Made by a program: the position numbers and the translations under genes
Part shown: positions 8,288-55,057 of the stretch, piece by piece
Position numbering within the stretch: the stretch's first letter is position 1
Layout: each line of letters begins with the position of its first letter
Source of the DNA: Blastocladiella emersonii ATCC 22665
Lineage: Eukaryota; Fungi; Blastocladiomycota
DNA length: 64,000 nucleotides
Assembly (NCBI GenBank): GCA_025594325.1
Contig: JANHCV010000011.1
Location: forward strand, 682,001-746,000
Direction: 5' to 3'
The notes under the pieces: model-generated
What the model was told of the DNA's origin: nothing
What the model saw: only the letters and a program-made list of their open reading frames with translations
Database searches by the model: none

Positions 8288-10965
8288 TGTGATGCGAGCT
8301 GTCGCGCAAGTCGTCTCCCACACTGAGTGAGTGCGCCACCTGCTGCGCCGCAACTGTGCCACCACGAACCGACTTGGACTTAAACTCTCTGGCTACGGCA
8401 CTATGGCTTCTACGTCGACTCTGATATTTGCCTTTCAACCCCCCCCCTTTCCCAGCTTGAGCTCTGGCTTGAGCTACCCCTTAAATTTCCACACGACACG
8501 TTTGTTTCGTCAGACCGCCTGTCCAGCGCTCACGCTAAACCGCATTGAGTAGCTAGCTGTACATTGCCTGGATCCGTCCCGTCATCGGTACGCGGCGCTT
8601 CGCCGACCGCGTACAAATGGTTTCAGTCGCGTGATCAGTATCAGCTCTGCTTCTGACCCAGGCGGTCCGGCCCGCTTCAACTGACGATCCCGCTTCCATG
8701 GCTGGTCGCTGGCCAATCAGCTCTTGCTCCCACACCAGGAGATATACCTTACTCTTTCTTACCAGGATATCTAAAGTGTGCGGATCATCTCCGCTTCTTC
8801 CGGCCCTGTTCTGTTGCCATTCCTCTCCATCCTCAGTTATCGTTATAAACTCTCGCTTACTAGGGCATTCAGTGTAATTTTCCAGTCAGTGAGCGGTCCG
8901 CCAACCTTTGCGGTCCCCCACGTCTAGCCCGACATCATTCACGTCCCCAACTTCGGCTACAACCGTTACAAGCGCATGAATTAGCCGTTCCTCGAATGCA
9001 ACTGCATCGCGTTCTCGCAAGACGCCAATGCATCGCCGCTAGCGCTACCTTGACCGTCAATGTGAACGACGGTTGCAGTATGACCTTGACCGCCGATATG
9101 AATTAGAAACTCACATTTTGGCGATGCAAAATCATCGCGGCGATCGAATAGCTCAAGACTGGCAACTCCTATCTACGCCGGCCTCCTCATCAACTACAAA
9201 CGGCTCAACGCGCTGTCCAAGAACGGCATGAATCTGCTCATGGTCGTACGTCCAACGCAGGTTCCAAAGGCCGATGTCGTCGAGTTGAGTCGAGTTGAGT
9301 TGAGTGAGCGCTGTGACCTTCACGACACCAACGTGCGGACTGAGAACGCGCCTGGACAATCTGCCGACCGCACAGACGAACGCGTAGCGCCACTCAGCCA
9401 CTGTGGCGCACCATGAAACAGGGCGAGTTCCGATCAATGATTCGATCACTGGAGCTCTGTTTCTAGCTCTTGGCGAGTCGAACGGCGTGTTTCGCAAACT
9501 CAGTGACATGAGCAAGTTGATCGGTCGGTCGTCAGAGAAAATTGTGGCTATCCAGCGGGGCGAGGTCTCACTGGACAATGAGTCCAACATCCTCCACATT
9601 CCGACCTCGCCTTCGCCAGTCAGCGAGTAGTACATGGAGGGGTTCACCGCCATGTTCCTTCCCACGCTGTTCCCTCTTCCTCATACGCAGGCCGGGATTA
9701 TAGCGCAGGCACATATGCATGCTCCTGTTCAACTTGGATCGTCGCTTCGCCGAACACCCGATCCTTGTGTTTCTCATGCACAACATGTTGTCGGAGCATA
9801 AAATGGGGGGAGGGGGGAGGGGGGTGGGGAATCTAGACACGGTGCCAAGTGTTACAATCGCAGTAAGACCAACTGTTGGACAAGGTCAAAAGCCCGTTGA
9901 TTGACCAACTTCGATTTCAACCGCGTGAATCAACTCGCACAGAACAGTGACGCGCCACAACTACGAGTAATGATTTGGGCTCTTTTCAACCTTGCCAAGC
10001 GGTTCCTCGGCCACCATGCCCGGCTCACTGGGCTGTATCCTATCAAGACGTCAAACGACTACAATAGAGCAGCTGAACACTCGGGATTTGCTTTATCTTT
10101 GAGGTCCAAGGTGCTCGGTCAAGGGATTTATGCAAGCGTTGAAGGGGTGAGTGTCTCCTCATACCGAGATCAGGCTTGCATTGAGCACACCTTGCGTGTT
10201 GTCACATACCTGGTCGCCTTAAACAAAAGCGCACCGCGAAATGTTGTTCTTGGGAGCAGTTACTTGCGGCAGAGTTCCTGCCAAAAGATACTTCGCGTCG
10301 TCGCAGCAGTTTGCTGACTTTGCTCGAACTCTATACCAAGTCTCTGTTTGAGGCACAAACACATTGGCAGCATTCTCATCCTAGAACCCATATTCCTTTG
10401 CCATCCATGGTAAGATTCAATCAGTCTTAGTCGGCAGAATAGCACGGTTTCATGCCGTGAGGCTAGTCTACCTGTTTTGTCCTCTCTCCCGAGTTCCAAC
10501 TGTCCCATTGGCAACGCTTGCGCCGTGTTCCGATCTGTCAATGATTGTAGCATCCGCCCCGCCACTAGTTATGCGGACCAACGAGAGCTCGCTCACTTCA
10601 CGTCGCTCGCGAGTAACAGTCCCGGCGCTCAGTTGAGACCCAGCTGGATCGATCAGCAATAAGCACGGTGAGTTTCGCACCCGTCAAGGTTCCGTCTGAG
10701 CCCGCGTCACGTAATTTGTAGTCGCCGATTGTCGCAACATCACGCAGCAACGCGACCCGCTGTCTGCGTCGCAGTTCCTACTTGCTCACGGCGCCTCTTA
10801 CCCCATCGCGCGGTTCCCGCATTCAAGTGATCAGGCGCGACTCGGAACCCAGGATCCGACATCGACAGTTGGATCAACTCTGAGGAACTGAGAACGAGAC
10901 GAGGAGGAACCGTAAAACCAGTATTCATAGCTCAATCAAACCCGCAACCTTTCGCTCGCACAATC

Positions 10966-13240
10966 TCACGCCGCCGCGCCCGCCGACCGCGCGCGGACAC
11001 CCGAGAGCCGCCACCACGGACCCGCGTGGCGCGGCCGCTTGCGCGCGGGGTCCACGAGGTCCGCGGGGATCACGTCGGCCGCCAGCACGGGCTCGCGGCG
11101 CTCGAGCGCCTGGTCGCCGCCGCCGTTGCGGAGCGCTGCGCCTGCGGCCAGCGCGGCGGCGGGAGCATCGCCTGGCGCAGGTGTCGGCTGCAGGATCACG
11201 GGCTCCTGGCCCGCGGGCGTGGGCTGGATGACGACGGGGACCTGGCCTGCGGGCGTCTGCGCCGGTGCGCCCGCGGCGGGCGGTGGCGGTGCGGGCGCGG
11301 CAGCGGCGGGCTGCTGGCGCGACTTGTTGATGTAGGCGTTGGTGACGGCGGCCGAGGCGGAGATGAGCGAGGCCATGACGACGACGACCGAGACGGCCAT
11401 CATGCGCTGCGGCGGGCCGCGGGCGTGGGCCTGGGCGACGGCCATCTGGAGCGACGGCGGCACGTACAGGGCGAGCGCCTGCTGCTGGCCGAGCACCTCG
11501 ACGCCGGTCCCGTTGCCCGCGGCGCTACGGACCGCGTGGCACTTGACGTCGCCGCTGCCGAGCGTCAGGTACCGGCCGGTCGCGCGGTGCTGCAGGGCGA
11601 ACGCGAGCGGCGACGCGGGCAGGCGGCGGAACACCCAGATGGCGGCCGCATCGATGGTGCGGGTCTCGCGCAACTTGCCCGAGGCCGCGTCCATGGCGAG
11701 GAACTGGCGCGTGTCGGCGGCGGCGAGGATCACGTCGCGGCCGTCGGCGCGCGTCGTGTCGAGGAAGACGCCGACGCGCCACCGGACCGGGTCGGCGGGC
11801 TTGCCCGCAGCACCGGCGGCGGTCGCGGGTTTCGGGTTCGCAGCCGTCGGCGGCGCGTCGGGTTGCGCAGCGGGAGCGACGGCGGGAGTGTCGCCGTCCT
11901 GGCCGGGTGGGGCGGGGCGCGGGCGCAGCTCGTCGACAAAGTGGATGTAGAAGAAGGCGACGAGGTCGTCCTGCTTCTTGGCGATCTGCTTGCGCGTGGT
12001 CTTGCCGACGTAGTAGTGCATGGCCTCGGGCTCGGTGACGGGCTGGCGCAGCGGGACCGCGGCGGTCGCGGCCTGCGACTCCTTGGCGCCGACGGCAGAC
12101 ACGGGCGTCGGCGCGGGAGCGGGCGCGTGCGCGAGGCCGACGGCGCGGCGCAGCGTCGACTTGGACCGGCCGACGGGCCGCTTGGAGAGCGCGTGGCCGT
12201 CGCTCGCGATGATGGCGACCGCGACGTTGATGGTCGAGGCGCCGGAGCCGGGATCCGACGGACCGCCACCGCCGCCGCGGCCGCCCCGCGGCTCATCGCG
12301 CGACGCGTTGGCGCGGTGGCGTAGACCGGCCTCGAGATCGGCCGCGTTGCCGTCGCCCGGCCCGCCACGCGACGGCGGCGGCGGGCCGCGTTGTTGCTGC
12401 TGCATGTTCATCGACGAGTTGCGGTTCGGCGGCGGACCGCGCTGCGCCATGGGTCCGGGACCGGGACCTGGGCCGGGGCGCGCGTTGGCGGGCATCTGGT
12501 TGGTGTTGCGCATCGGCGGCGAGTTGGGCCCGTTGCCGCCCGCGCCGTTGCGGACGAAGAAGGCGTGGAAGAGGAAGCCGATGGGCGGGACGAGCGGACC
12601 GTTGCCCGAGGGCGGCGGGCGGAGCTCGGGCGCGGGGACCATGAGCAGCGTCGGGCGGCCGGGCGGCGAGGCCGATGACGCCGACGCGGCGCCCGAGGGC
12701 GGGAGGCCGACGGTGAGCCACTGGCCCGACTCGGAGATGAGGGCAAAGTCGCGCGGGCCGAACGTCTACGAGGGAGGGAGGGAGGCGAGAGCAGGGTGAG
12801 CGGTGGCGGTTCGAGGGCGCGAGGGAGCGAGCGAACGCACCTTGGCGGTCCAGAGCGTGAAGGTGGTCGGGGTGTTGAGGACAAAGATCTCGCCCGAGGG
12901 CTTGGCGCCGATGTACCAGCGCGGGTGGAACAGGCTGACGAGCAGCTTGGTGCCGTCGCGCGGCGGGAGGGCGGCGAGCGGGACGGGCGGGGCGTTGGGG
13001 CGGAACTCGAGGAGGACAAACTGCCAGTTCGGGTCGGCGTCGAGCGGCGGGGCGCCGGGCGGGGCGAGCGTGAGGTAGGGCGGCACGTCGTGGCGCACGT
13101 GGAGGAAGGCGCGGCGCGCCGTGGCGAGCAGGATCGGGCGCTCGGCCGGGTGCGGGCCGGCGGCGGGCGCGGCGGCGGTCGGGGACGCGGTCGGCGAGCC
13201 GTGGCTGCTGCGACCGCCAGCGCCCGCTGTGACGGGCCGC

Positions 13241-13274
<34 letters not shown>

Positions 13275-13407
13275 TCCCGCCGCCGCCCTTGTCGCTGGTG
13301 CGGTCGCCGCTCGGCGGGCGCGGCCTGGCCGTGGCGGCGGTGCCCGAAGCGATCGGGTCGAGCGGGATGAGCGGCTCGGTGGCGGGGTTGGCGTAGAAGG
13401 TGGCCAT
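10966..13407 (-). CDS. Uncharacterised protein with two probable fascin-like beta-trefoil segments and a hydrophobic (TM-like) helix near the C-terminus
   Basis: Exons 13407-12841 and 12765-10966; the 75-nt GTGCGT...TAG intron joins the two ORFs in frame (LWTAK|TFGPRDF). Fascin-like strands include FALISESGQWLTVG, LAAADTRQFLAMD and FALQHRATGRYLTL. Hydrophobic segment MMAVSVVVVMASLISASAAV. TATAAA lies about 115 nt upstream. The fold call is tentative. Confidence 0.72.
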
Positions 13408-14484
13408 GGCGTCGCGTCGAGAGTGAGTGATGCGCGGCGAGAGTCGATGTCGTAGCAGAAAAGGACACGTCGGCAGCGGTCCGAGCGAGAGGGCGAGGCA
13501 GAGAGGGGTCTCGGGCGCGCTTTATACGGCGGGGCGGAGCCAAGCGTCGCCTCGGTCGGGCGCGGCGGCGAGCGGCGATGGCGGGCAGCGTGTTCCGGCG
13601 GGGGCCAGCGGCAGGGATGACGCAGCGGGCGGCCGCGGTGGTGCGAGGGGCGATGCGAGGCAGGTGCCGTTGGCTCTCTTCGCGCGCAGGCGGAGGAGGC
13701 AAGGGCGGGTGCAGGTGCGAGCGCGAGCGAAGAGGTAGGTCCACGGCAAAGTGGATCTAGGCCGGGCGACCGGAGCCGCCGCGCGCAGTGCGCCGCCTTC
13801 GTCTTCCGCCGCGAGCACCGGCCGCTGCGCCGTGCGGCCGCCCAGAACAGCGGCGGCGTGCCGCTCGTTCGCCGTGCGCGCGCATCGGCGTGAACGAGCG
13901 CGGTCGGTGGCGATCACGACGCACACTCGATTGCATCGAGTCGGCCGGCGCGCGACGCGTCGCGGCAAGTGGTGTCAAGGGCGGCGGGCGCGGCGCGCGG
14001 GTCGGTTGCAATGGGAGGGACGGCGCGGCGGTAGATGCATGGCGTGGAAGGTGGTGGGCGGTGAGGTGGGCGAGAGGCGAGCCGAGTGGAGCTTGCGCTG
14101 TGATCCAGCGGCAGCGGTCGCCGCGCGCGTGCGTGGGTGTGCGCCAAGAGTGGAGCCCAAGCCGCGCGCCCGCGTGAAAGGGAGCTGGCCGTTTGCGCAC
14201 ATGTGCGCGAGCGAGCGTGGGAGCGGCGGCGGACGCGTCGCCGCCCACGGTGCGAGACGCGCGCGACGCGTGCGGGTGCGAGACGCGTTGCGGGTAACGT
14301 GGGCGCACGTTCTGCGCGCCGGCGACAGGAGTGGCAGCTCTCGAGGCGGCGCGGACACGACCACGCGCGGCGGCCGCGGCCACGCTCTCTCTCCCGCCGC
14401 GGCCCAGGCCGCGGCCCCCGGCCAAGACGACGTACTCGCGTCCTGACCGCGGCCACCCCGTCCGTGATCTCGCCCGCGCGGCGC

Positions 14485-17361
14485 ATGTACTCTGCTGAAC
14501 CACCGCCGACCATGGCCCCCGGCCCCGCCCAAGTCGCCCCCGCCGTCGCCGCAACGCCGCCGAGCTCGGCCGGCCACCCGAGCCTGCCGCCGCGCCCAAG
14601 GTTCGCGCGCGGCCGCACCGCCCGCCACCTGCCACCTGCGCCCTCGGCCGCCGCGGCCACCGCGAGGCCCACCACGGCGCCCCCACCGACCTCGGCTGCC
14701 GCCGCAACCACTGGCCCGCCACCGCCGTCGTCCACGCGCAATGACGCATCGGCCTCGGTAGCCCTCTCGCGCATCCTCAGCACCTCGTCCTTTGCCTCGC
14801 TCGTGGCCTCGGCCTCGCCTTCGCCCTCGCGGACCGCTACTACGCTGCCGCCACCCAGCAACTCGACCCGATCCGCTTCCTCCTCGGCCCCCGCCGCCAT
14901 CCCGCTTCCCGATGCGCTGCCCGCCTCGACTCCGACGCCCTCGAGCGTCGCGCTCGCCGACATGTGCCGCGCGCTGCGCCAGGTCACCCCGATCGTCCTC
15001 AACCCCGCCACCAAGCGCAAGTCCTCGGCCGCACTCGACCCCGCCACCACCGCCACCGCGAGCAACGGCGTCATACGCCTCCCGCCGCGCTCTCCCGGCG
15101 CCAGCACCTCGCCCGTCCCCACCACCACCACCATCTCGGGCTCGGCCAGCTCGCCGCGCCTCGTCATCCAACACCTCTACCACCGCCTGTCGCCCGCGCC
15201 GCCGCCCGCCGCGCCCCTCTCCAACCCGCCCGCCAACTCGCGCGGCGCCGTGCGCCTCGCCGCCGCCACCCAGTGGCCCTCGGCCCCCGCATCGCCGCAC
15301 CGCGTGCAGGAAGCCGTCCGTCTTCCGCCACCCCCGCCGCTTCCCTCTTCGCTGCTCGCGCGCGACGACACCAATGCCCCCTCCACGGCCTCGAGCTCGT
15401 TTGCCTCGCTAGCCCTCGCCGCGTCCGTCAACTCGTCAGTCGCGGCCGCGTGCGCCGCCGCCGCGTCCCCGCTCTCGTCGCTTGGGAGCTCGCTCTCCAG
15501 CCTCACCTCGGACCGCGGCGGCGACGGACCAGCGCCGCCGCCCGCGGGCACTTTTACCCTCCGCTCGCGGAACCTCAACTCGGCCGCCGCCTCCAACGCG
15601 AGTCTCGATGAACCCATGGAGCTCGACGCCGACATGCACGCCTCACTCGCCGCCGCTCTCAACATCAAAAAGTGCGCACCGATCTCGATCCTCGCCTCCC
15701 TCACCGTACTCACACTTTGACGTCTCAGACAAGTCATGGCCGCCGTCTCGCGCTCGAGCGGACCCTACACCCGCGCCTCGCGCTCCAGTCCTGACACTCG
15801 CGTACGCTTGCTGCCGTTTACACCCTCCGCCACCACCACTCACTCGCATGTGCTCGCAGGTCAACAACGACTACTGCGAGTCATGCCGCGGCCACGGCAG
15901 CCTGCTGTGCTGCGAGCGATGCCCCAAGGCCTTCCACCTGCTGTGCCTCGACCCGCCGCTCGACTACGGCGAGATGCCCGAGGGGTCGTGGTACTGCAAG
16001 CCCTGCACCGTCGTACGTCTCGCTCGCCCTCCCCGCGCTCGCAACCCGGCACTTACGCTCGACGATAGAAGCTCGGCCCGCTCCCTGCGGCAGCCGCCGC
16101 GGAACCCGGCCCGAAGGCATCTTCCGCCGCCACCGCCGATCCACAACGCGCCAAGCCGCACGTCCCGCTCCTGCACTTCTGCCCGCTCCCGCCGCCACCC
16201 CTCCGCCCGTCCTCGTCGTCGTCACAACCCGACCCCTTCTCCACGTCCTCGTCGCTGTCGGACCTGCCCGCCGACCCGAGCCCCGAGACCGCCGACCCCG
16301 TCACCTCGCGCCTGCGCACGCTGCGCACGCGCACGCGAACCGCCGACTCTGCGCCTCCACCACGCGGGTCGCGCGGCCGGGGTGGTGCCGCGGGTCCCAA
16401 ATCCGCCGCGGCCGGGAAGCGCGCGAAACCGGCGCCGCCCATCACGACGCTGTTCGCGTCACTCGCCGCCAAACTCGACGTCGAGGACCCGCGCGTCTTC
16501 TCGCTCCCCGCGCGCGGGGTGCTCAACGCCTTCGCCGGGATCGTGCCCGACTACGACGGCGAGTTCAGTCTCACGGGCTCGCGGCGGCAAGCTCCTGGCG
16601 AGCCGGGATCCGCGCCCGCGGCGCCGCTGCCGCAGCTGCAGGTGATGCCCGTGGCGAACGGTGGGACTGTCGGCGGCGCCAAGGACGCCAAGTCGCGGCT
16701 CCTGCTTCTGCAGCAGCAGCAACAGCAGCTGCTCCCGTCGGCAACCGACCTGTGCTACGCGTGCACGCGGCGCGTCGGCCCGCACCGCCGGCTCGCGGTC
16801 CGGTGCGCGCAGTGCCCGCTCGTGTTCCACCTCGACTGCCTCGACCCGCCGTGGACCGTGTCCCCGGGGCTCAGCGCCGGCGACGGATGGCAGTGTCCGT
16901 GCCACGCTGCGCCAGCGGGGAACCGGATCGGGCCCGGCAGCAACTCGGAGCGGATCCGCGCGATCGTGCAGGCCGGCGTGCGCGGAGCCGGGTGGGCGCC
17001 GCCGCACGCGCAGTCCGACGACGAGAAGTCGCCCGTCGACGGGTCGCAGCGGCTGTTGTGGGCGGACCACGAAGCGGACGACGACGAGGAGGAGGACGAT
17101 GACGATGCGACGGATGACGAGGAGGAGATGGCCGAGGACGACGAGTACGAGCTGGTCCAGGCGATCGGGGACGCGCCCGAGGTCGGCCCGACGCGCATCG
17201 ACGAGGTGGCGAGGCCTGCCGAGGAGCCGGCGCGAGCAGAGGAGCGCAAGGTCGATCGAGCCGAGGACATGCTGAGCTTGCTCTTCCAGGCGGCCCAGGA
17301 GTACCCCGTCGATGAGCACGATCGAATCGATCAGGACGCCGTCGCGGCGCAACCGGTGTGA
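14485..17361 (+). CDS. Double PHD-finger protein, Rco1/Cph1/PHF12-like (Rpd3S-type HDAC subunit)
   Basis: Introns 15672-15728, 15802-15859 and 16013-16068 keep the frame. PHD1 is NNDYCESCRGHGSLLCCERCPKAFHLLCLDPPL...WYCKPC; PHD2 is CYAC...CAQCPLVFHLDCLDPP...WQCPCH. The inter-PHD motif DPRVFSLPARGVLNAFAGIVPDYDGEF resembles Rco1-family NPxxFxLP...F.GV...GEY. The start codon is uncertain (long S/P/A-rich N-terminus). Confidence 0.82.
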
Positions 17362-49632: not shown

Positions 49633-52600
49633 ATGTCCCGCGACGCCGGCCCCGCCATGGGCTCGATGCCCATCGTGCAGCGCCGCGCCGTGACCGGCTA
49701 CTTTGCCGGCGCCGAGTGGGGCGCCCTGCTGCTCACCACCAACGGCGCCGCCAACATCCAGCTGTACCAGATCGACCCGCAGTCGTTCACGCTGCTCAAG
49801 ATCGCCGAGTGCTTCCTCGGCGCCAACGTGCTCGGCCTCGAGCGCCTGCGCATCGGCGCCAACTCGAAAGACTACATCCTCGCCTCGCTCGACGGCGGCG
49901 CCATCCTGATCCTCGAGTACAACCCGCAGAACGTCACCTTCGAGCTCGTCGACCAGGAGCGCTACCAGTCCACGTACCACCCGTGGCTCATCTGGGGACG
50001 CAACATGATGGCCGATTGGAAGTCGCGCTGCGTGCTCATCGGTACGTGCGCCCTCCGCCGACTCGCGCCCGCACTCGTCCGCCGAGCTAACCCTCGCCCA
50101 CCCTCACTCCCTCGCGCCTGCAGGTAACGTCGAGGACTGCAAAATCGTCTACATCCTCGTCGACCCCGTCGAGACCAAGCTCAGCGTCGCCCTCCCGACC
50201 GTCGATGCCATCCAGGGCTCGGTCCTCTACTCGGTCGTCTCGGTCGAGAGCTCGTGGCGCAACCCCATCTTCGCCTGCCTCGAGGCCTTCCGCCCCGCCT
50301 CCAAGGCCGCTGCCGCCGCCGCATCCTCGTCGGCCAACCCGGCCGCGTCCTCGGCCGCCCTGCGCGAGGAGACCATCCTGCACGGCGACAAGATGCTCGT
50401 CTACTTTGAGCTCGACCTCGACCAGAACCAGGTGTTCCGCCGCTGGGACGAGCGCGTCGACGCCTCGGCTAACATGGTCATCCCCGTGCCCGGCGACTCG
50501 GGCCCCGGCGGCGTCCTCGTGTGCTCGCGCAACCGCGTCGCCTGGCTGCACGAGCGCCGCACCCCGCAGTCGGTCCCGATCCCGCGCCCGCCGCAGCTCT
50601 CGCTCGACGTCGAAATGTACCTCGTCTCGTACACGCCCGTGCGCGGGCTCGCCAACACCCCGCCCACGGTCCTCGCCCAGAGCATCTTCGGCGACGTGTA
50701 CCTCATCGAGTTCCGCGACGACGTGCTGTCCATCAAGTTCTTTGACGCCATCCCGCAGGCCGAGAACCTGTTCCTACTCTCGAACCGGTTCCTCCTCGCC
50801 TGCTCGCTCTTCGAGTACCCGCGCGTCTACTACCTGCTCAGCATCGGCGACGACGACGACCCCGACCAGCCCACGTACTCGGCCCTCGAGCACACCGAGC
50901 CCGAGGACGCCTTCTTCCGCCCGCGCCAGCTGCGCCATCTCACGTCCACGGCCGCGCTCCAGCAGCAGCAGCTCCAGATCCAGCGCGAGAAGCAGCGCCA
51001 GCAGCTCCTCCTCGCCCAGCAGCAGCAACAGCAGCAGGCCCAGGCCCAGGCCCACCTCGCGCAGCAGCAGCAGCAGCAGCACCAGCAGCAGCAGATCGCC
51101 GCCTCGCCATACTACCAGCAGCCGGGCACCAGCGACCTCGCCCTGCGACGCGGCCACACCACGCGCGCGCCCGCCGGGTACGGCCCACCGCCGCCGCCCA
51201 ACGGGCACCACGGCGGCTTGCCGCAGCAGCAGCACCCGCAGGCGCGGTTCGGCCAGCCGCCCATGCAGGGCACCCCCGCCTACTACCCGAGCGGCGCCCA
51301 GTCCATGCCGCGCCAGTCGTCGGCCGCGTACTCCCAAATGTACGGCGGACCGAACGGTGGCCCGCCGCCGCCCCGCCCACCACCAATCCCCGCGCACTAC
51401 GCCGCTGCCGGTGGTGCGGGTGGGTTCGCGCCGCAGCAGCAGCAGCAGTACGCGCCGCACCCCGGATACGGCCCACCACCACCGCAGCAGCAGCAGCAGC
51501 AGCAAATGTCGCCGTACCAGCAGGCGCAGCACCAGCAGTTTGCGCACCACCCGCAGCAGCAGCAGCAGCGCATGCAGCCGCCGCACCCGCAGCAGCAGCA
51601 GCTCTCGCCGCAGCAGATGGCCGCGTACGGCGCCCCGCCACCGCCGCTCGCGCACCACCACGCGACGTACCCGCCGCCCGGCGTCGGCGGTGCCGGTCCC
51701 GCGCCACCGGGCGCGCCCATGGACCCCGCTGCCGCGGCGTTCGCGTCGCGCCAGTCGAGTCTCGCGCACCGCCAGCAGGTCATGGTCGGCGGCCGCACCG
51801 CATCCCTGCGCCGCCCGCGGTCGCAGATCATGCACCTCCCCGCCACCCCGCAGCAGCAGCTCCAGCACCGCATGGTCCAGCCCGCCATGCTCAACAAGCG
51901 GTACAGCTCGCTGCGCCGGCCCGCGAGTGCTGGGTCCGTCCAGCCGCAGCACCCCGGCGCCGCGCACATGCAGCAGCTCCCCGGGCTGTCCGAGGAGGAG
52001 GTCCCGCAGCGCCCGCCATCGGCCGGTGCCGGGCGCCGGTCGCCCGGTCCCGCGGCTGCGCCCGGGCCCGCGCGCATGGGCAGCGTCGACTCGGGGTACC
52101 CGAACAGCGGGTTCGTCCCCGCGCACGGGTACCATCCCGAGGACATGGTGGGGCGGCCCGGATCGCCCGCCAACCTCGCCGGTGGTCCGCTCGACTCGGG
52201 CGACTCGGGCATGTGGAGCGGCGAGCTCAGCGCCGACACGACGCGGCCGTCGTCGCCCGCGCTTTCGGGCTCCGCGGGCGGGGCCGAGGCCAGCCCCGTG
52301 TCGCCGTCCGGCGGCATCGCGCCCGCGCTCCCCGAGTCGGACGAGAAGCGGCGCAAGCACCTCGAGCTGCGGTCGTATGTCGCCAACGAGGTCAGCGAGA
52401 CGGAGCAGTCGTACCGCGAGTCGCTCGGGATCCTGCTGGGCCAGTTCAAGGAGCCGCTGTCGCAGCAGAAGCTGGTGCCCAACGTGTTCATCAACCTCGT
52501 GTTCCGCGGCGTCAAGGAGCTGCTCGACTTCTCGGAGGTATTTGCGCAGGAGCTCGCCGACACGCTCGCGGCGTGGGACGACGAGACGTCGCAGCTCGCG

Positions 52601-55057
52601 CCGCTGTTCCTCGCGCACCGCGACGACTTTGGCGTGTTCCGCAAGTTTGTCGACAACTACGCCAACGCGCTCGCCATGGTGCGCCGCGCCGAGGAGTCGA
52701 ACCCGCAGTTCAAGCAGTTCAACGACCGGTGCAAGTCGTCGCGCGACACCAACCGCCAGCAGCTGCAGGATTTCCTGATCCTGCCCATCCAGCGCGCCAC
52801 GCGGTACCCGCTCCTCCTCAAGGACGTGCGCAAGCACACGCCCGCCGACCATCCGGACGCGGACGGGCTCACGCAGGCGCTGTCGATGATGAACGAGATC
52901 GCGGCGCAGGTCAACCAGGTCAAGCAGCAGGAGGAGGAGATGACGCGCATGTTCACGATGCTCAAGCAGGTCGAGGGCACCCCGCCCATCGTCATCAAGT
53001 ACTCGCGCCGCCTGATCCTCGAGGTCGACGCCTCGGACATGTCGGGCATGACGCTCGCCGGGCTCGGCGGCGCCCTCGGGTCGCTCGTGACCGGCTCGCT
53101 CGCCGCCGCCACCAAGCACCACCCGATGCGCCTCTACCTCATGTCGGACCTGCTGCTCGTCGCCAAGGTCCACAAGAAGAAGACCAAGTTTGTCCGGCTC
53201 CTTGACCTCGCCGACCTCACGGCGACCGAGCGCGGCACCACCATGCTCGTCATCGACATCGCGGCCGGCTCGCTGTCCACGTCGTCAGCCACGCTCAACG
53301 CCAAGCACGCCGGCGCCGGCGGCCCGCTCGGCGGCGGCAAGGGGTTTGGGATGGCCCCCGGCGGCGGCCCGCTCATCCCCAAGTCGGCGGGCGGCGCAGG
53401 CGACGCGGGCAAGGAGCAGCTCCCGACCAACTACGTCTTCTCGCTGCCCGACGAAAAGTCGCGCCAGAACTTCATGCTCGCGCTCGCCGCCAAGATCAAG
53501 TCGACGCGCGAGCAGCGCGCCCGCGAGGGCGGCGTCTTCTCGCTCCCGCGCAACGTGGCCGCCATCCCGATCCCGGCCGGCGGCGCAGTCCCGCCGCCGA
53601 TGCTCCCGAGCAGCCCGCTGCCGTCCACGGCGGCCTCGATCACCAGCACGCCGTCGGCGGCGGGTGTGGCCGGCCCGATTGCGATCGCCGGCAGCGGCGC
53701 CGCGAGCACCGCCGGGTCCGACGCGAGCAAGATCACCACGCCCGTGTCGCGGTCCCCGCGCACCCCGAGCCACGCGTCTGCGTCGCTGCTTGAGCACTCG
53801 GACGCGTCGGCGGGGTCCGCGGGCAAGCCCGGCGGCGTGCTCATGCTGCCGTCGTCCAACAACCCCGCGATGGTCGCGTCGGGTGAGAACCGGCGCGCCA
53901 GCCTCAACATCCCGCTCAACGGGGCAGGCGACCTCCGGCGCCCGTCGCACTCGTCGACGCTGTCCGACATCGAGTCGGCGCTCACGTACATGAACATGCA
54001 GGAGCCCGGCCCGCCGCGGATCGACGAGGACGTGGCGCTCGCGCCGCTCCCGCCCGCGCTGCCGTCGTTTGCGGCCGGGAGTGGCGGCGGCGACGCGCGC
54101 TTGCGCACGGGCACACCGCTCGACGAGCTCGACGACGTGGCCAGCGAGTTTGCGGTGGTCGGCGCGTACTCGGACGGCGACCTCGCGGCGCTCCAGGCGC
54201 GTGACGAGGACGAGGACGGCGGCGGCGACCGCTTCGACCACGACGACGACAACGTGTACGTGCCTGCGCCACCACCACCACCGCCCTCTGCGCCACCGGG
54301 GCCGCCCCCACCACCCGCACCGCGCCGTCCAGCGACCGCAACTGACGACCCCGCCTCGGACACGTACTCGCTGGGTATCTACCTCCCGTCGGCCGACGAC
54401 GCCTCCTCGACGCGATCTCGACCTCGACCCGCCACGCTCAACCGGCCGGCGTCGCTCCAGTCGTCTTCCAAGTCGCAGCCTCAGTCTCCAGTAACCGTCG
54501 ACGGGCTCGAGGGCCTGAGTCTCGTCGGCATGCCGTTGTCAAGCAGCACGCCCGCGTCCGCGACGCACTCCCCCACCACCACGCACGCCTACCCCCACCC
54601 GCCGCACCACCACCACCACCCTAGAAGCACCAGTACCCCATCGTCCCCTACGCCGTCGCCCGCGTCGCCCACGGTCTCTGCCTCGCGCCGCGAGCTCCGC
54701 AAAACCAGCTCGTTCCGCGCCCTCATGTCCCTGTCCGAGTCGTCGCTGCAGCCGCTGCGCAACCTGCTCGGCGGGACCAGCAGCACCAGCAACCTCGCGG
54801 CGGCCGACGCGCTCTCGTCGTCGCCCGCGACCGCATCGGCGCCCGTCGTGTACGCGAGCGACGCGAGCTTCGTGTCCGCGTCCGAGGACCTGGCGGTCGC
54901 GCCCAGTCCCCCGCTCACGCGGTCGCCGACGGCGGGCTCCGAGTCGAGCGCGCGGAGCGGTGGCGGGCCACCGGTAGCGGCCGCGGGGCGCAAGCTGTCG
55001 TGGACCATGGGGTTCGGGTCGCTCAAGCGGTCGGGCAGCGGGTCGTCGGCGTCATAG
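49633..55057 (+). CDS. About 1780-aa fusion: SF3B3/Rse1-like N-terminal beta-propeller + polyQ/Pro linker + RhoGEF DH-PH + low-complexity tail
   Basis: Exons 49633-50041 and 50124-55057 (82-nt intron, in frame). N-terminal motifs KDYILASLDGGAILILEY, NPIFACLE, YFELDLDQNQV, VPGDSGPGGVLVCS, IKFFDAIP, IGDDDD and FFRPRQLRHL parallel SF3B3. The DH domain shows EVSETEQSY, FLILPIQRATRYPLLLKD...KHT and NEIAAQVNQ; a PH-like region follows. Confidence 0.88.

What the first reader, a model, noticed from the sequence alone, without database searches (positions are those of the whole stretch)
49633..55057. Spliceosomal SF3B3/Rse1 propeller fragment fused to a RhoGEF: apparently novel architecture
Seen: one reading frame (single 82-nt intron) runs from a roughly 400-aa region colinear with the SF3B3 N-terminus through a polyQ/Pro linker into a clear Dbl-homology domain and a PH-like domain. 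The SF3B3-like region is KDYI...ILILEY, NPIFACLE, YFELDL, GPGGVLVCS, KFFDAIP, GDDDD, FFRPRQL. Established: SF3B3/Rse1 (DDB1/CPSF160 family) is a highly conserved three-propeller U2 snRNP scaffold, and DH-PH modules activate Rho/Cdc42/Rac. From my recollection of SF3B3, the homology stops near where propeller A hands over to propeller B, and the copy is far more diverged than a true Rse1 orthologue. Inference: a duplicated propeller was repurposed as an interaction module on a polarity GEF, or links RNA processing to Rho signalling.
Basis: partly seen in the sequence, partly recalled or inferred. Interest (0 to 1): 0.82.

Follow-up and report, generated by a model that had tools for sequence, protein, structure and literature searches.

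The report
Splicing-factor propeller fused to RhoGEF
In the water fungus Blastocladiella emersonii and its relatives, a copy of one beta-propeller from the spliceosome protein SF3B3/Rse1 is permanently joined to a Rho-GTPase activator; this conserved, phylum-restricted gene fusion sits unnamed in databases and no paper was found on it.

Summary
Window 49633-55057 (+) is one two-exon gene with an 82-nt intron at 50042-50123. It is Blastocladiella emersonii H9P43_008253. It encodes a complete SF3B3-type first propeller (BPA), a ~470-aa Q/P-rich linker, a DH domain (Pfam E 8e-43), a PH-like domain and a disordered tail.

- **Fusion is real.** The same architecture occurs in Blastocladiella (2 species), Allomyces (3), Catenaria and Sorochytrium. 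In four genera the propeller end, linker and DH start lie in a single exon or ORF, with shared synteny.
- **Separate RSE1 exists.** A canonical three-propeller RSE1 (1204 aa) sits on another contig.
- **Origin.** Fusion and canonical genes share intron positions. The ML tree places the fusion propellers with Blastocladiomycota SF3B3, but an AU test does not reject other placements.
- **Constraint.** The propeller is as conserved as the essential BPA. It has nevertheless replaced half of the residues near-invariant in SF3B3, which points to a new function.

Not shown: transcripts (no RNA run was listed), GEF activity and propeller partners.

Verdict: a real, lineage-specific RhoGEF variant. It is present in databases as "hypothetical" or mis-named "rse1", and no paper on it was found. 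The "duplicated propeller repurposed" reading is supported. A splicing-Rho link is not. This scan also noted the linker of this gene separately (s1-290308).

The parts
49633..50041 (+). Exon 1: first in-frame ATG at 49633 (the annotated start is the ATG at 49657); encodes blades 1-2 and part of blade 3 of the propeller
   Evidence: Pfam PF10433 profile 3-119
50042..50123 (+). 82-nt intron (GTACGT...CTAAC...CAG), phase 1 within the Gly codon of ..VLIG|NVED..; same position and phase as the single intron of the canonical B. emersonii RSE1 gene
   Evidence: retained in genomic DNA contigs
50124..55057 (+). Exon 2 including the stop codon (55055-55057): rest of propeller, linker, DH, PH-like domain, tail
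   Evidence: GC3 0.85-0.98 in this frame along its whole length
49657..50953 (+). Complete seven-bladed SF3B3/Rse1-type first beta-propeller (BPA), interrupted by the intron; ends at the conserved FRPRxLRHLTST strand
   Evidence: 150 of 405 columns invariant in six orthologues
50954..52342 (+). Gln/Pro/His-rich low-complexity linker (~465 aa), including the CAG repeat 51005-51098 where short-read contigs break
   Evidence: no Pfam family
51746..51928 (+). Conserved island in the linker: SRQSSLAHRQQ, RTASLRRPRS and KRYSSLRRPAS (basic-Ser motifs, candidate AGC/PKA-type phosphosites; an inference)
   Evidence: Alignment A1, Catenaria ORF, coordinates
52379..52915 (+). Dbl-homology (DH) RhoGEF domain with intact CR1 (..ETEQSY..), CR3 (LPIQRATRYPLLL) and the following QVN Asn
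   Evidence: Pfam PF00621 E 8.3e-43, profile 1-180/180; invariant columns in A3; model pLDDT >93
53012..53524 (+). PH-like beta-sandwich plus C-terminal helix, with two disordered loop insertions
   Evidence: AF2 model; Foldseek matches DH/PH tandems over the full length; no Pfam PH hit
53525..55054 (+). Ser/Pro/Ala-rich, probably disordered C-terminal tail ending in the conserved basic motif RKLSWTMGFGSLKR (54989-55039)

Best explanation
This is a single protein-coding gene for a Dbl-family Rho-GTPase exchange factor. Its N-terminus is a complete, autonomous seven-bladed propeller descended from propeller A of the spliceosomal scaffold SF3B3/Rse1.

Origin. A genomic (intron-containing) partial duplication of RSE1, most likely within Blastocladiomycota, became joined to a DH-PH module. 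After a burst of change the propeller came under strong purifying selection with a new residue pattern.

How it most likely works (inferred). The DH-PH tandem catalyses GDP/GTP exchange on a Rho/Rac/Cdc42-type GTPase. The propeller no longer acts in SF3b. It serves as a protein-docking or regulatory platform that sets where or when the GEF is active. The long disordered linker, with conserved basic-Ser motifs, offers phospho-regulation between the two.

Shown: gene structure, domain identities, conservation, separate canonical RSE1, shared introns.

Inferred: GEF activity, the role of the propeller, phosphorylation.
For: Gene and domains.

Same architecture in nine annotated proteins from Blastocladiella, Allomyces and Sorochytrium, plus an unannotated continuous ORF in Catenaria.

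The junction lies inside one exon in A. macrogynus (aa 164-1045) and Sorochytrium (aa 387-786). Only the fusion frame is open across the linker in Sorochytrium, Allomyces and Catenaria.

Synteny: a GPN-loop GTPase lies upstream.

The assembly is PacBio HiFi with 10.5-kb reads (PMC9730499).

Canonical RSE1 is present in the same species.

Shared intron positions: IG|N/A in all six genes examined, with phase 1 checked by eye in both B. emersonii genes; K|DYI; K|ML.Y.EL in phase 0.

The ML tree joins the fusion clade (100/100) to Blastocladiomycota SF3B3 at 98/95.

The fusion BPA is 75% identical between Blastocladiella and Allomyces, against 70.5% for the canonical BPA.

Only 52 of 103 near-invariant SF3B3 columns are kept, and 52 fusion-invariant residues are rare in SF3B3.

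The DH catalytic motifs are invariant.
Against: No transcript evidence: no RNA run was listed, and the runs found are genomic DNA from the source sample. An internal promoter giving a DH-PH-only isoform cannot be excluded.

An AU test does not reject placing the fusion propellers outside fungal SF3B3 (p 0.31), so the timing of the duplication rests on taxonomic restriction plus the ML tree.

No PH Pfam hit.

The GTPase substrate cannot be assigned: the nearest outside relatives are only about 26% identical and span Cdc42-, Rac- and RhoA-specific GEFs.

The propeller's partner is unknown.
Confidence: 0.8

Rival explanations
1. The propeller is mainly an intramolecular autoinhibitor. It docks on the DH-PH tandem and blocks GTPase access until the linker is phosphorylated or a ligand binds, as N-terminal or flanking elements do in Vav, Asef, Ephexin4 and P-Rex1.
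For: Foldseek's best structural matches include autoinhibited GEFs: Ephexin4 DH-PH-SH3, Vav1, Asef and P-Rex1. Conserved basic-Ser motifs lie in the linker between the two domains. That autoinhibition by accessory domains is common in Dbl GEFs is established knowledge.
Against: Nothing was tested here. No inter-domain prediction was possible, because the full length exceeds the folding limit and no contact output is given. A 470-aa linker is long for a simple latch.
Confidence: 0.25
2. The propeller still binds SF3b or SAGA partners (SF3B5, the SF3B1 C-terminal HEAT repeats), so the protein physically couples RNA processing or transcription to Rho signalling.
For: The fold is closest to SF3B3 BPA (Z 43 against 32-33 for DDB1 and CPSF160). 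52 of 103 near-invariant SF3B3 positions are retained.
Against: In SF3b the partners are held between BPA and BPC (PMC7452928), and BPC and CTD are absent here. Half of the near-invariant SF3B3 residues are replaced, many radically, and then fixed. The stem branch is 3.25 substitutions per site. A canonical RSE1 is retained in every species checked.
Confidence: 0.05
3. Artefact: two adjacent genes or an assembly chimera merged by an open frame that is trivial in 70-76% GC DNA.
For: The linker has no stop in any of the three frames in B. emersonii. Long spurious ORFs of 857 aa and 799 aa overlap the locus. Short-read contigs break at the CAG repeat 51005-51098. There are no RNA data. Annotation was ab initio.
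Against: GC3 is 0.92 in the fusion frame across the linker. The fusion is conserved in five genera from independent assemblies, with the junction inside one exon or ORF and only that frame open. Linker motifs are conserved. HiFi reads of 10.5 kb span the 94-bp repeat.
Confidence: 0.03
4. The propeller is a decaying remnant: a translated but functionless leader left by a partial duplication.
For: Long stem branch, and loss of half the SF3B3-invariant residues.
Against: 150 of 405 columns are invariant across six orthologues from three genera. It is at least as conserved as the essential canonical BPA between Blastocladiella and Allomyces. The fold is confidently predicted (pLDDT 84.5, pTM 0.87). 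No frameshift or stop occurs in any of about ten copies.
Confidence: 0.02

Closest known systems
SF3B3 / Rse1 (SF3b130), of the DDB1 / CPSF160 triple-propeller family
   Same: The N-terminal 405 aa are homologous to and colinear with BPA (human aa 14-399; Z 43, rmsd about 2.5 A; sequence E 4e-43). The hallmark motifs are kept (KDYI..ILEY, NP.FACLE, ELDL). Intron positions are shared with Blastocladiomycota RSE1 genes.
   Different: Only one of the three propellers is present: no BPB, BPC or C-terminal helical domain. Identity to the organism's own RSE1 BPA is about 31%. 51 of 103 near-invariant SF3B3 positions are replaced. It is a paralogue, since the true RSE1 (P0288) is elsewhere in the genome.
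Dbl-family RhoGEFs with a DH-PH tandem (structural neighbours: Ephexin4, PDZ-RhoGEF, LARG, p115, intersectin, P-Rex1)
   Same: A full-length DH domain above the Pfam threshold, invariant CR1/CR3 residues, and DH followed directly by a PH-like fold.
   Different: Only about 26% identity to any GEF outside the fusion family, so it belongs to no named subfamily. The PH domain is too diverged for Pfam and carries two long disordered inserts. The N-terminal accessory domain is not mentioned in the main text of the 175-genome Dbl survey (PMC5499878; supplements not checked).
RhoGEFs that carry other beta-propellers (ARHGEF10/ARHGEF17 WD40-like propeller; alsin/ALS2 RCC1 propeller). Recalled from memory; an RCC1+FYVE+DH protein also appeared as hit P0121.
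   Same: The general design: a propeller interaction platform on the same polypeptide as a DH-PH catalytic unit (P0121 domains).
   Different: Those propellers are WD40 or RCC1 type and unrelated to the DDB1/SF3B3 class. This is analogy, not homology.
BeGC1 rhodopsin-guanylyl cyclase and other signalling gene fusions of B. emersonii
   Same: Another lineage-restricted domain fusion in Blastocladiomycota signalling proteins. The genome paper highlights fusion as a theme (PMC9730499).
   Different: Unrelated domains. That fusion has been studied experimentally; this one has not.

Membership tests
Dbl-family RhoGEF | DH (Dbl-homology) domain | tested here: met
   PF00621, 147 bits against a cut-off of 27.6, profile 1-180/180; helical model with pLDDT >93
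Dbl-family RhoGEF | Conserved catalytic/GTPase-contact residues in CR1 (Glu of the T-E motif), CR3 (Q-R..Y) and the following Asn | tested here: met
   E17, E22, P149, Q151, R152, Y156 and N192 are invariant across 16 DH-PH sequences, including intersectin, P-Rex1 and kalirin. Which of these residues matter for catalysis is taken from established DH-domain literature.
Dbl-family RhoGEF | PH domain immediately C-terminal to DH | tested here: met
   The AF2 model shows seven strands plus a C-terminal helix. Foldseek aligns about 400 columns to solved DH/PH tandems. No Pfam PH hit, so it is met by fold only.
Dbl-family RhoGEF | Nucleotide-exchange activity on a Rho-family GTPase | not testable with these tools
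   Needs a biochemical assay
SF3B3/Rse1 orthologue (U2 snRNP SF3b scaffold) | Three propellers BPA-BPB-BPC plus a C-terminal helical domain | tested here: not met
   Only PF10433 is found. There is no PF23726 or PF03178, which every canonical SF3B3 carries. Homology ends at human residue about 399.
SF3B3/Rse1 orthologue (U2 snRNP SF3b scaffold) | BPA fold and sequence homology | tested here: met
   E 4e-43 to human SF3B3; Z 43; TMq 0.81-0.83
SF3B3/Rse1 orthologue (U2 snRNP SF3b scaffold) | Being the genome's orthologous copy and keeping SF3B3's near-invariant residues | tested here: not met
   A separate canonical RSE1 (P0288, 1204 aa) lies on another contig. 52 of 103 near-invariant columns are retained.
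SF3B3/Rse1 orthologue (U2 snRNP SF3b scaffold) | Binding of SF3B5 and SF3B1 between BPA and BPC | not testable with these tools
   BPC is absent, so the clamp cannot form as in SF3b (an inference from PMC7452928). Binding itself was not tested.

The most novel reading that the evidence does not exclude
The excised propeller is a natural example of a DDB1/SF3B3-class propeller that folds and works on its own. It may still recognise a helical or small-protein ligand of the SF3B5/H-box kind, so that Rho activation in Blastocladiomycota is physically coupled to a component of the splicing/SAGA machinery or to a ligand class so far known only for triple-propeller scaffolds.
Probability: 0.07. Interest if true: 0.8.

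Novelty: new variant of a known kind. Interest (0 to 1): 0.5.

Why it matters
It shows that one propeller of the normally inseparable SF3B3/DDB1/CPSF160 triple-propeller scaffold can be cut out at its exact domain boundary. It is predicted to close by itself and has been kept under strong selection in a new context. That bears on how large scaffolds evolve and on engineering minimal DDB1-type modules.

It also adds a phylum-specific regulator to the Rho signalling of zoosporic fungi, a group being developed as a model for sensory and motility circuits.

Practically, it corrects database errors. Allomyces copies are named 'pre-mRNA-splicing factor rse1', and the Catenaria gene is split into fragments.

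Tried and rejected
- **RNA evidence.** No RNA run was listed for 50700-52500. The four runs found with kind 'any' are genomic contigs of the source sample: they keep the intron and break at the CAG repeat. They test neither transcription nor, independently, the assembly.
- **Earlier notes of this scan.** They held nothing on SF3B3, RSE1 or DDB1.
- **Metagenome scan with fusion-specific peptide patterns.** It returned only canonical SF3B3 genes. The two 57%-identity segments (L078, L079) continue into BPB and match the canonical protein better.
- **DH-PH origin.** No close non-fusion relative was found among proteins of 904-2875 aa. Shorter GEFs were not searched, so the donor of the GEF half remains unknown.
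- **Dating the duplication.** The ML tree supports a Blastocladiomycota origin, but the AU test does not exclude a placement outside fungi (p 0.31). I therefore do not claim the date as shown.
- **Pfam on the linker, tail and PH region.** Nothing.
- **My own recollection of DDB1 boundaries.** I first suspected the seventh blade was missing. The published boundaries and the structural alignment rejected that.
- **Leonard and Richards 2012 fusion survey.** It could not be read.
Full report
**What is in the sequence**

The region 49633-55057 (+) reads as one gene.
- Exon 1 (49633-50041) is joined to exon 2 (50124-55057) by an 82-nt intron with fungal-type signals (GTACGT, CTAAC branch site, CAG). 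The intron splits a Gly codon in phase 1.
- The spliced ORF is 1780 aa with no internal stop.
- The DNA is 68-76% GC. Long meaningless ORFs abound (857 aa in another frame, 799 aa antisense), and the Q/P-rich linker has no stop in any frame. An open frame by itself is therefore no evidence here.
- Third-position GC is evidence. It is 0.85-0.98 in the proposed frame along the entire CDS, linker included (0.92), against 0.32-0.71 at second positions.

**Domains**

- Pfam finds the RSE1/DDB1/CPSF1 first propeller (PF10433) split across the two exons (profile 3-119 and 123-328 of 351). It finds a full RhoGEF/DH domain (E 8.3e-43).
- Against PDB sequences, aa 11-402 align colinearly with human SF3B3 17-396 (E 4e-43).
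- An AlphaFold2 model of aa 1-405 (pLDDT 84.5, pTM 0.87, about 29 strands) superposes on human SF3B3 residues 14-399 with Z 43 and rmsd 2.4-2.6 A. It is clearly better than on CPSF160 (Z about 33) or DDB1 (Z about 32).
- The published boundaries of human BPA are aa 11-404. Residues 1-10 and 405-441 belong to BPC (PMC13023183). The fusion therefore carries exactly one complete propeller A and nothing of BPB, BPC or the C-terminal domain.
- A model of aa 868-1275 gives a high-confidence DH helical bundle followed by seven strands and a C-terminal helix with two disordered inserts. It matches solved DH/PH tandems over about 400 columns: Ephexin4, PDZ-RhoGEF, LARG, p115, intersectin, P-Rex1.
- The residues that define DH catalysis (CR1 T-E, CR3 Q-R..Y, the downstream Asn) are invariant in an alignment with distant GEFs.
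- Pfam sees nothing in the linker, PH region or tail.

**Whose genome, and is the fusion real**

- The protein is H9P43_008253 of Blastocladiella emersonii ATCC 22665. It is annotated from the second Met, at 49657.
- Proteins with the same two Pfam domains and the same order exist in B. britannica, Allomyces macrogynus (four copies), A. javanicus, A. arbusculus and Sorochytrium milnesiophthora.
- In Catenaria anguillulae the gene is annotated only as fragments. The DNA holds one continuous 1645-codon ORF running from blade 2 through linker, DH-PH and the conserved C-terminal motif.
- In A. macrogynus one exon covers aa 164-1045. In Sorochytrium one exon covers aa 387-786. Both span propeller end, linker and DH start.
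- In these less GC-rich genomes only the fusion frame is open across the linker. Stops in the other two frames number 3 and 3, 1 and 1, and 7 and 1.
- A GPN-loop GTPase gene lies immediately upstream in the window, in Allomyces and in Catenaria. A CHORD-CS gene lies downstream in the latter two.
- The B. emersonii assembly is PacBio HiFi with 10.5-kb reads (PMC9730499), so the 94-bp CAG repeat at which short-read contigs break is no assembly risk.
- Two genes, a chimera or an annotation merge are therefore very unlikely.
- What is missing is RNA. No RNA run was listed, the runs found are genomic, and the annotation was ab initio.

**A separate true RSE1**

A search seeded with the Catenaria SF3B3 (found through) returned canonical three-propeller proteins of about 1200 aa from B. 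emersonii (P0288, 1204 aa, a different contig), A. javanicus, B. britannica, Sorochytrium and Paraphysoderma. The fusion propeller is a paralogue, 31% identical to the organism's own RSE1 BPA.

**Origin**

- An exhaustive HMMER pass over 1.84 billion cluster representatives found five fusion-clade representatives plus the Catenaria fragment. The score then drops from 349 to 157 bits, to ordinary SF3B3s. No other lineage has this subfamily.
- A metagenome scan added none.
- Intron positions tie the two gene families together. The intron inside the Gly codon of ..IG|(N/A).E.. is present in the fusion genes of Blastocladiella, Allomyces and Sorochytrium and in the canonical RSE1 genes of Blastocladiella, Allomyces and Sorochytrium. 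Phase 1 was checked by eye in both B. emersonii genes.
- K|DYI is shared by the Sorochytrium and Catenaria fusions and the A. javanicus RSE1. K|ML.Y.EL (phase 0) is shared by both Sorochytrium genes.
- This argues for a DNA-level partial duplication rather than a retrocopy.
- An ML tree (LG+C20, 43 BPAs) makes the fusions one clade (100/100) on a very long stem (3.25 substitutions per site). The clade attaches to Blastocladiomycota SF3B3 (98/95), unresolved relative to Paraphysoderma.
- An AU test does not reject a position outside all fungal SF3B3 (p 0.31). The timing is therefore the most parsimonious reading, not a demonstrated fact.

**Selection**

- Between B. emersonii and A. javanicus the fusion BPA is 75% identical and the essential canonical BPA 70.5%. 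Within Blastocladiella the figures are 69% and 62%. To Sorochytrium they are 44% and 58%.
- 150 of 405 columns are invariant in six orthologues.
- Of 103 columns at least 90% conserved in 37 canonical BPAs from all supergroups, only 52 are kept. The rest are often radical replacements that are then fixed (for example R to W, R to D, E to V, E to R). 52 fusion-invariant residues are rare in SF3B3.
- This is the pattern of a burst of change followed by a new constraint, that is, neofunctionalisation.

**Linker and tail**

These regions are mostly low-complexity. They hold conserved islands of basic-Ser motifs (SRQSSLAHRQQ, RTASLRRPRS, KRYSSLRRPAS; 51746-51928) and a C-terminal RKLSW..FG..KR motif (54989-55039), present from Blastocladiella to Catenaria and partly in Sorochytrium. 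Their resemblance to R-R/K-x-S kinase sites is my inference.

**How it probably works**

- The DH-PH unit is intact, so nucleotide exchange on a Rho-family GTPase is the expected activity. Specificity cannot be read, because outside relatives are about 26% identical and of mixed specificity.
- In SF3b, SF3B5 and the SF3B1 C-terminus are clamped between BPA and BPC (PMC7452928). With BPC gone and half the invariant residues changed, a spliceosomal role is unlikely.
- The best reading is a docking or regulatory platform for the GEF, possibly autoinhibitory, with phospho-control through the linker.

**Comparison and novelty**

- It works like other multidomain Dbl GEFs.
- It is a member of the Dbl family: DH, catalytic motifs and PH fold are all met.
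- It is not an SF3B3 orthologue: the architecture, orthology and residue tests are not met.
- Propeller-bearing GEFs exist (WD40-like in ARHGEF10/17, RCC1 in alsin; recalled from memory), but none has a DDB1/SF3B3-class propeller.
- Four literature searches and the main text of the 175-genome Dbl survey gave no description of this architecture.
- The sequences are public, as 'hypothetical protein', 'DH domain-containing protein' or, wrongly, 'pre-mRNA-splicing factor rse1'.
- I rate it a new variant of a known kind, of moderate interest.

Noticed in passing
L004:10341-15514 (Catenaria anguillulae MCFL01000009.1): The Catenaria orthologue is annotated only as a 191-aa and a 316-aa fragment. The DNA holds a continuous 1645-codon ORF (10577-15514) with propeller, linker, DH-PH and C-terminal motif, preceded by a first exon ending ..RIGTNPK. 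The gene model needs repair.
   Followed up: partly
P0004, P0005 (Allomyces javanicus, A. arbusculus): The fusion proteins are named 'pre-mRNA-splicing factor rse1' in GenBank, although the true SF3B3 of A. javanicus is a separate 1205-aa protein (P0289). This is annotation transfer from the N-terminal domain only.
   Followed up: yes
window:47254-48430 (-): A GPN-loop GTPase gene (PF03029, GPPGSGKT and GPNGG motifs) lies divergently upstream of the fusion gene. The same neighbour occurs in Allomyces and Catenaria, so local synteny is conserved.
   Followed up: partly
window:56110-56943 (+): The C-terminal part of a proteasome lid subunit RPN5/PSMD12 gene (PSMD12-CSN4_N, PCI, RPN5_C) lies downstream.
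   Followed up: no
window:50205-52778 (+, other frame) and 50774-53173 (-): ORFs of 857 aa and 799 aa overlap the gene in other frames. They are Arg/Ser/Pro-rich products of the high GC content, not genes. The linker 50954-52363 has no stop in any forward frame.
   Followed up: yes
window:51005-51098: A CAG (polyGln) repeat at which all short-read contigs of the source sample end. Many apparent 'joints' in 51240-51600 come from other CAG/CCG-rich loci mapping here. Whether the repeat length varies between cells was not examined.
   Followed up: no
window:49969 (run X4 contig end): One contig of run X4 continues into a loxP-like sequence (GCATACATTATACGAAGTTAT). This is most likely a Cre-lox mate-pair library linker, not biology.
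   Followed up: no
P0002, P0003, P0007, P0008 (Allomyces macrogynus): There are four copies in two divergent pairs (about 71% and about 60% identity to the B. emersonii propeller). One of them (P0008) lacks the first part of the DH domain in its gene model. Whether this reflects a duplicated or polyploid genome, with one truncated or mis-predicted copy, was not checked.
   Followed up: no
window:51746-51928 and 54989-55039: Short basic-Ser motifs are conserved inside otherwise fast-evolving low-complexity sequence (RTASLRRPRS, KRYSSLRRPAS, RKLSW). They are candidate kinase or 14-3-3 sites in an organism whose germination is known for cAMP signalling.
   Followed up: partly
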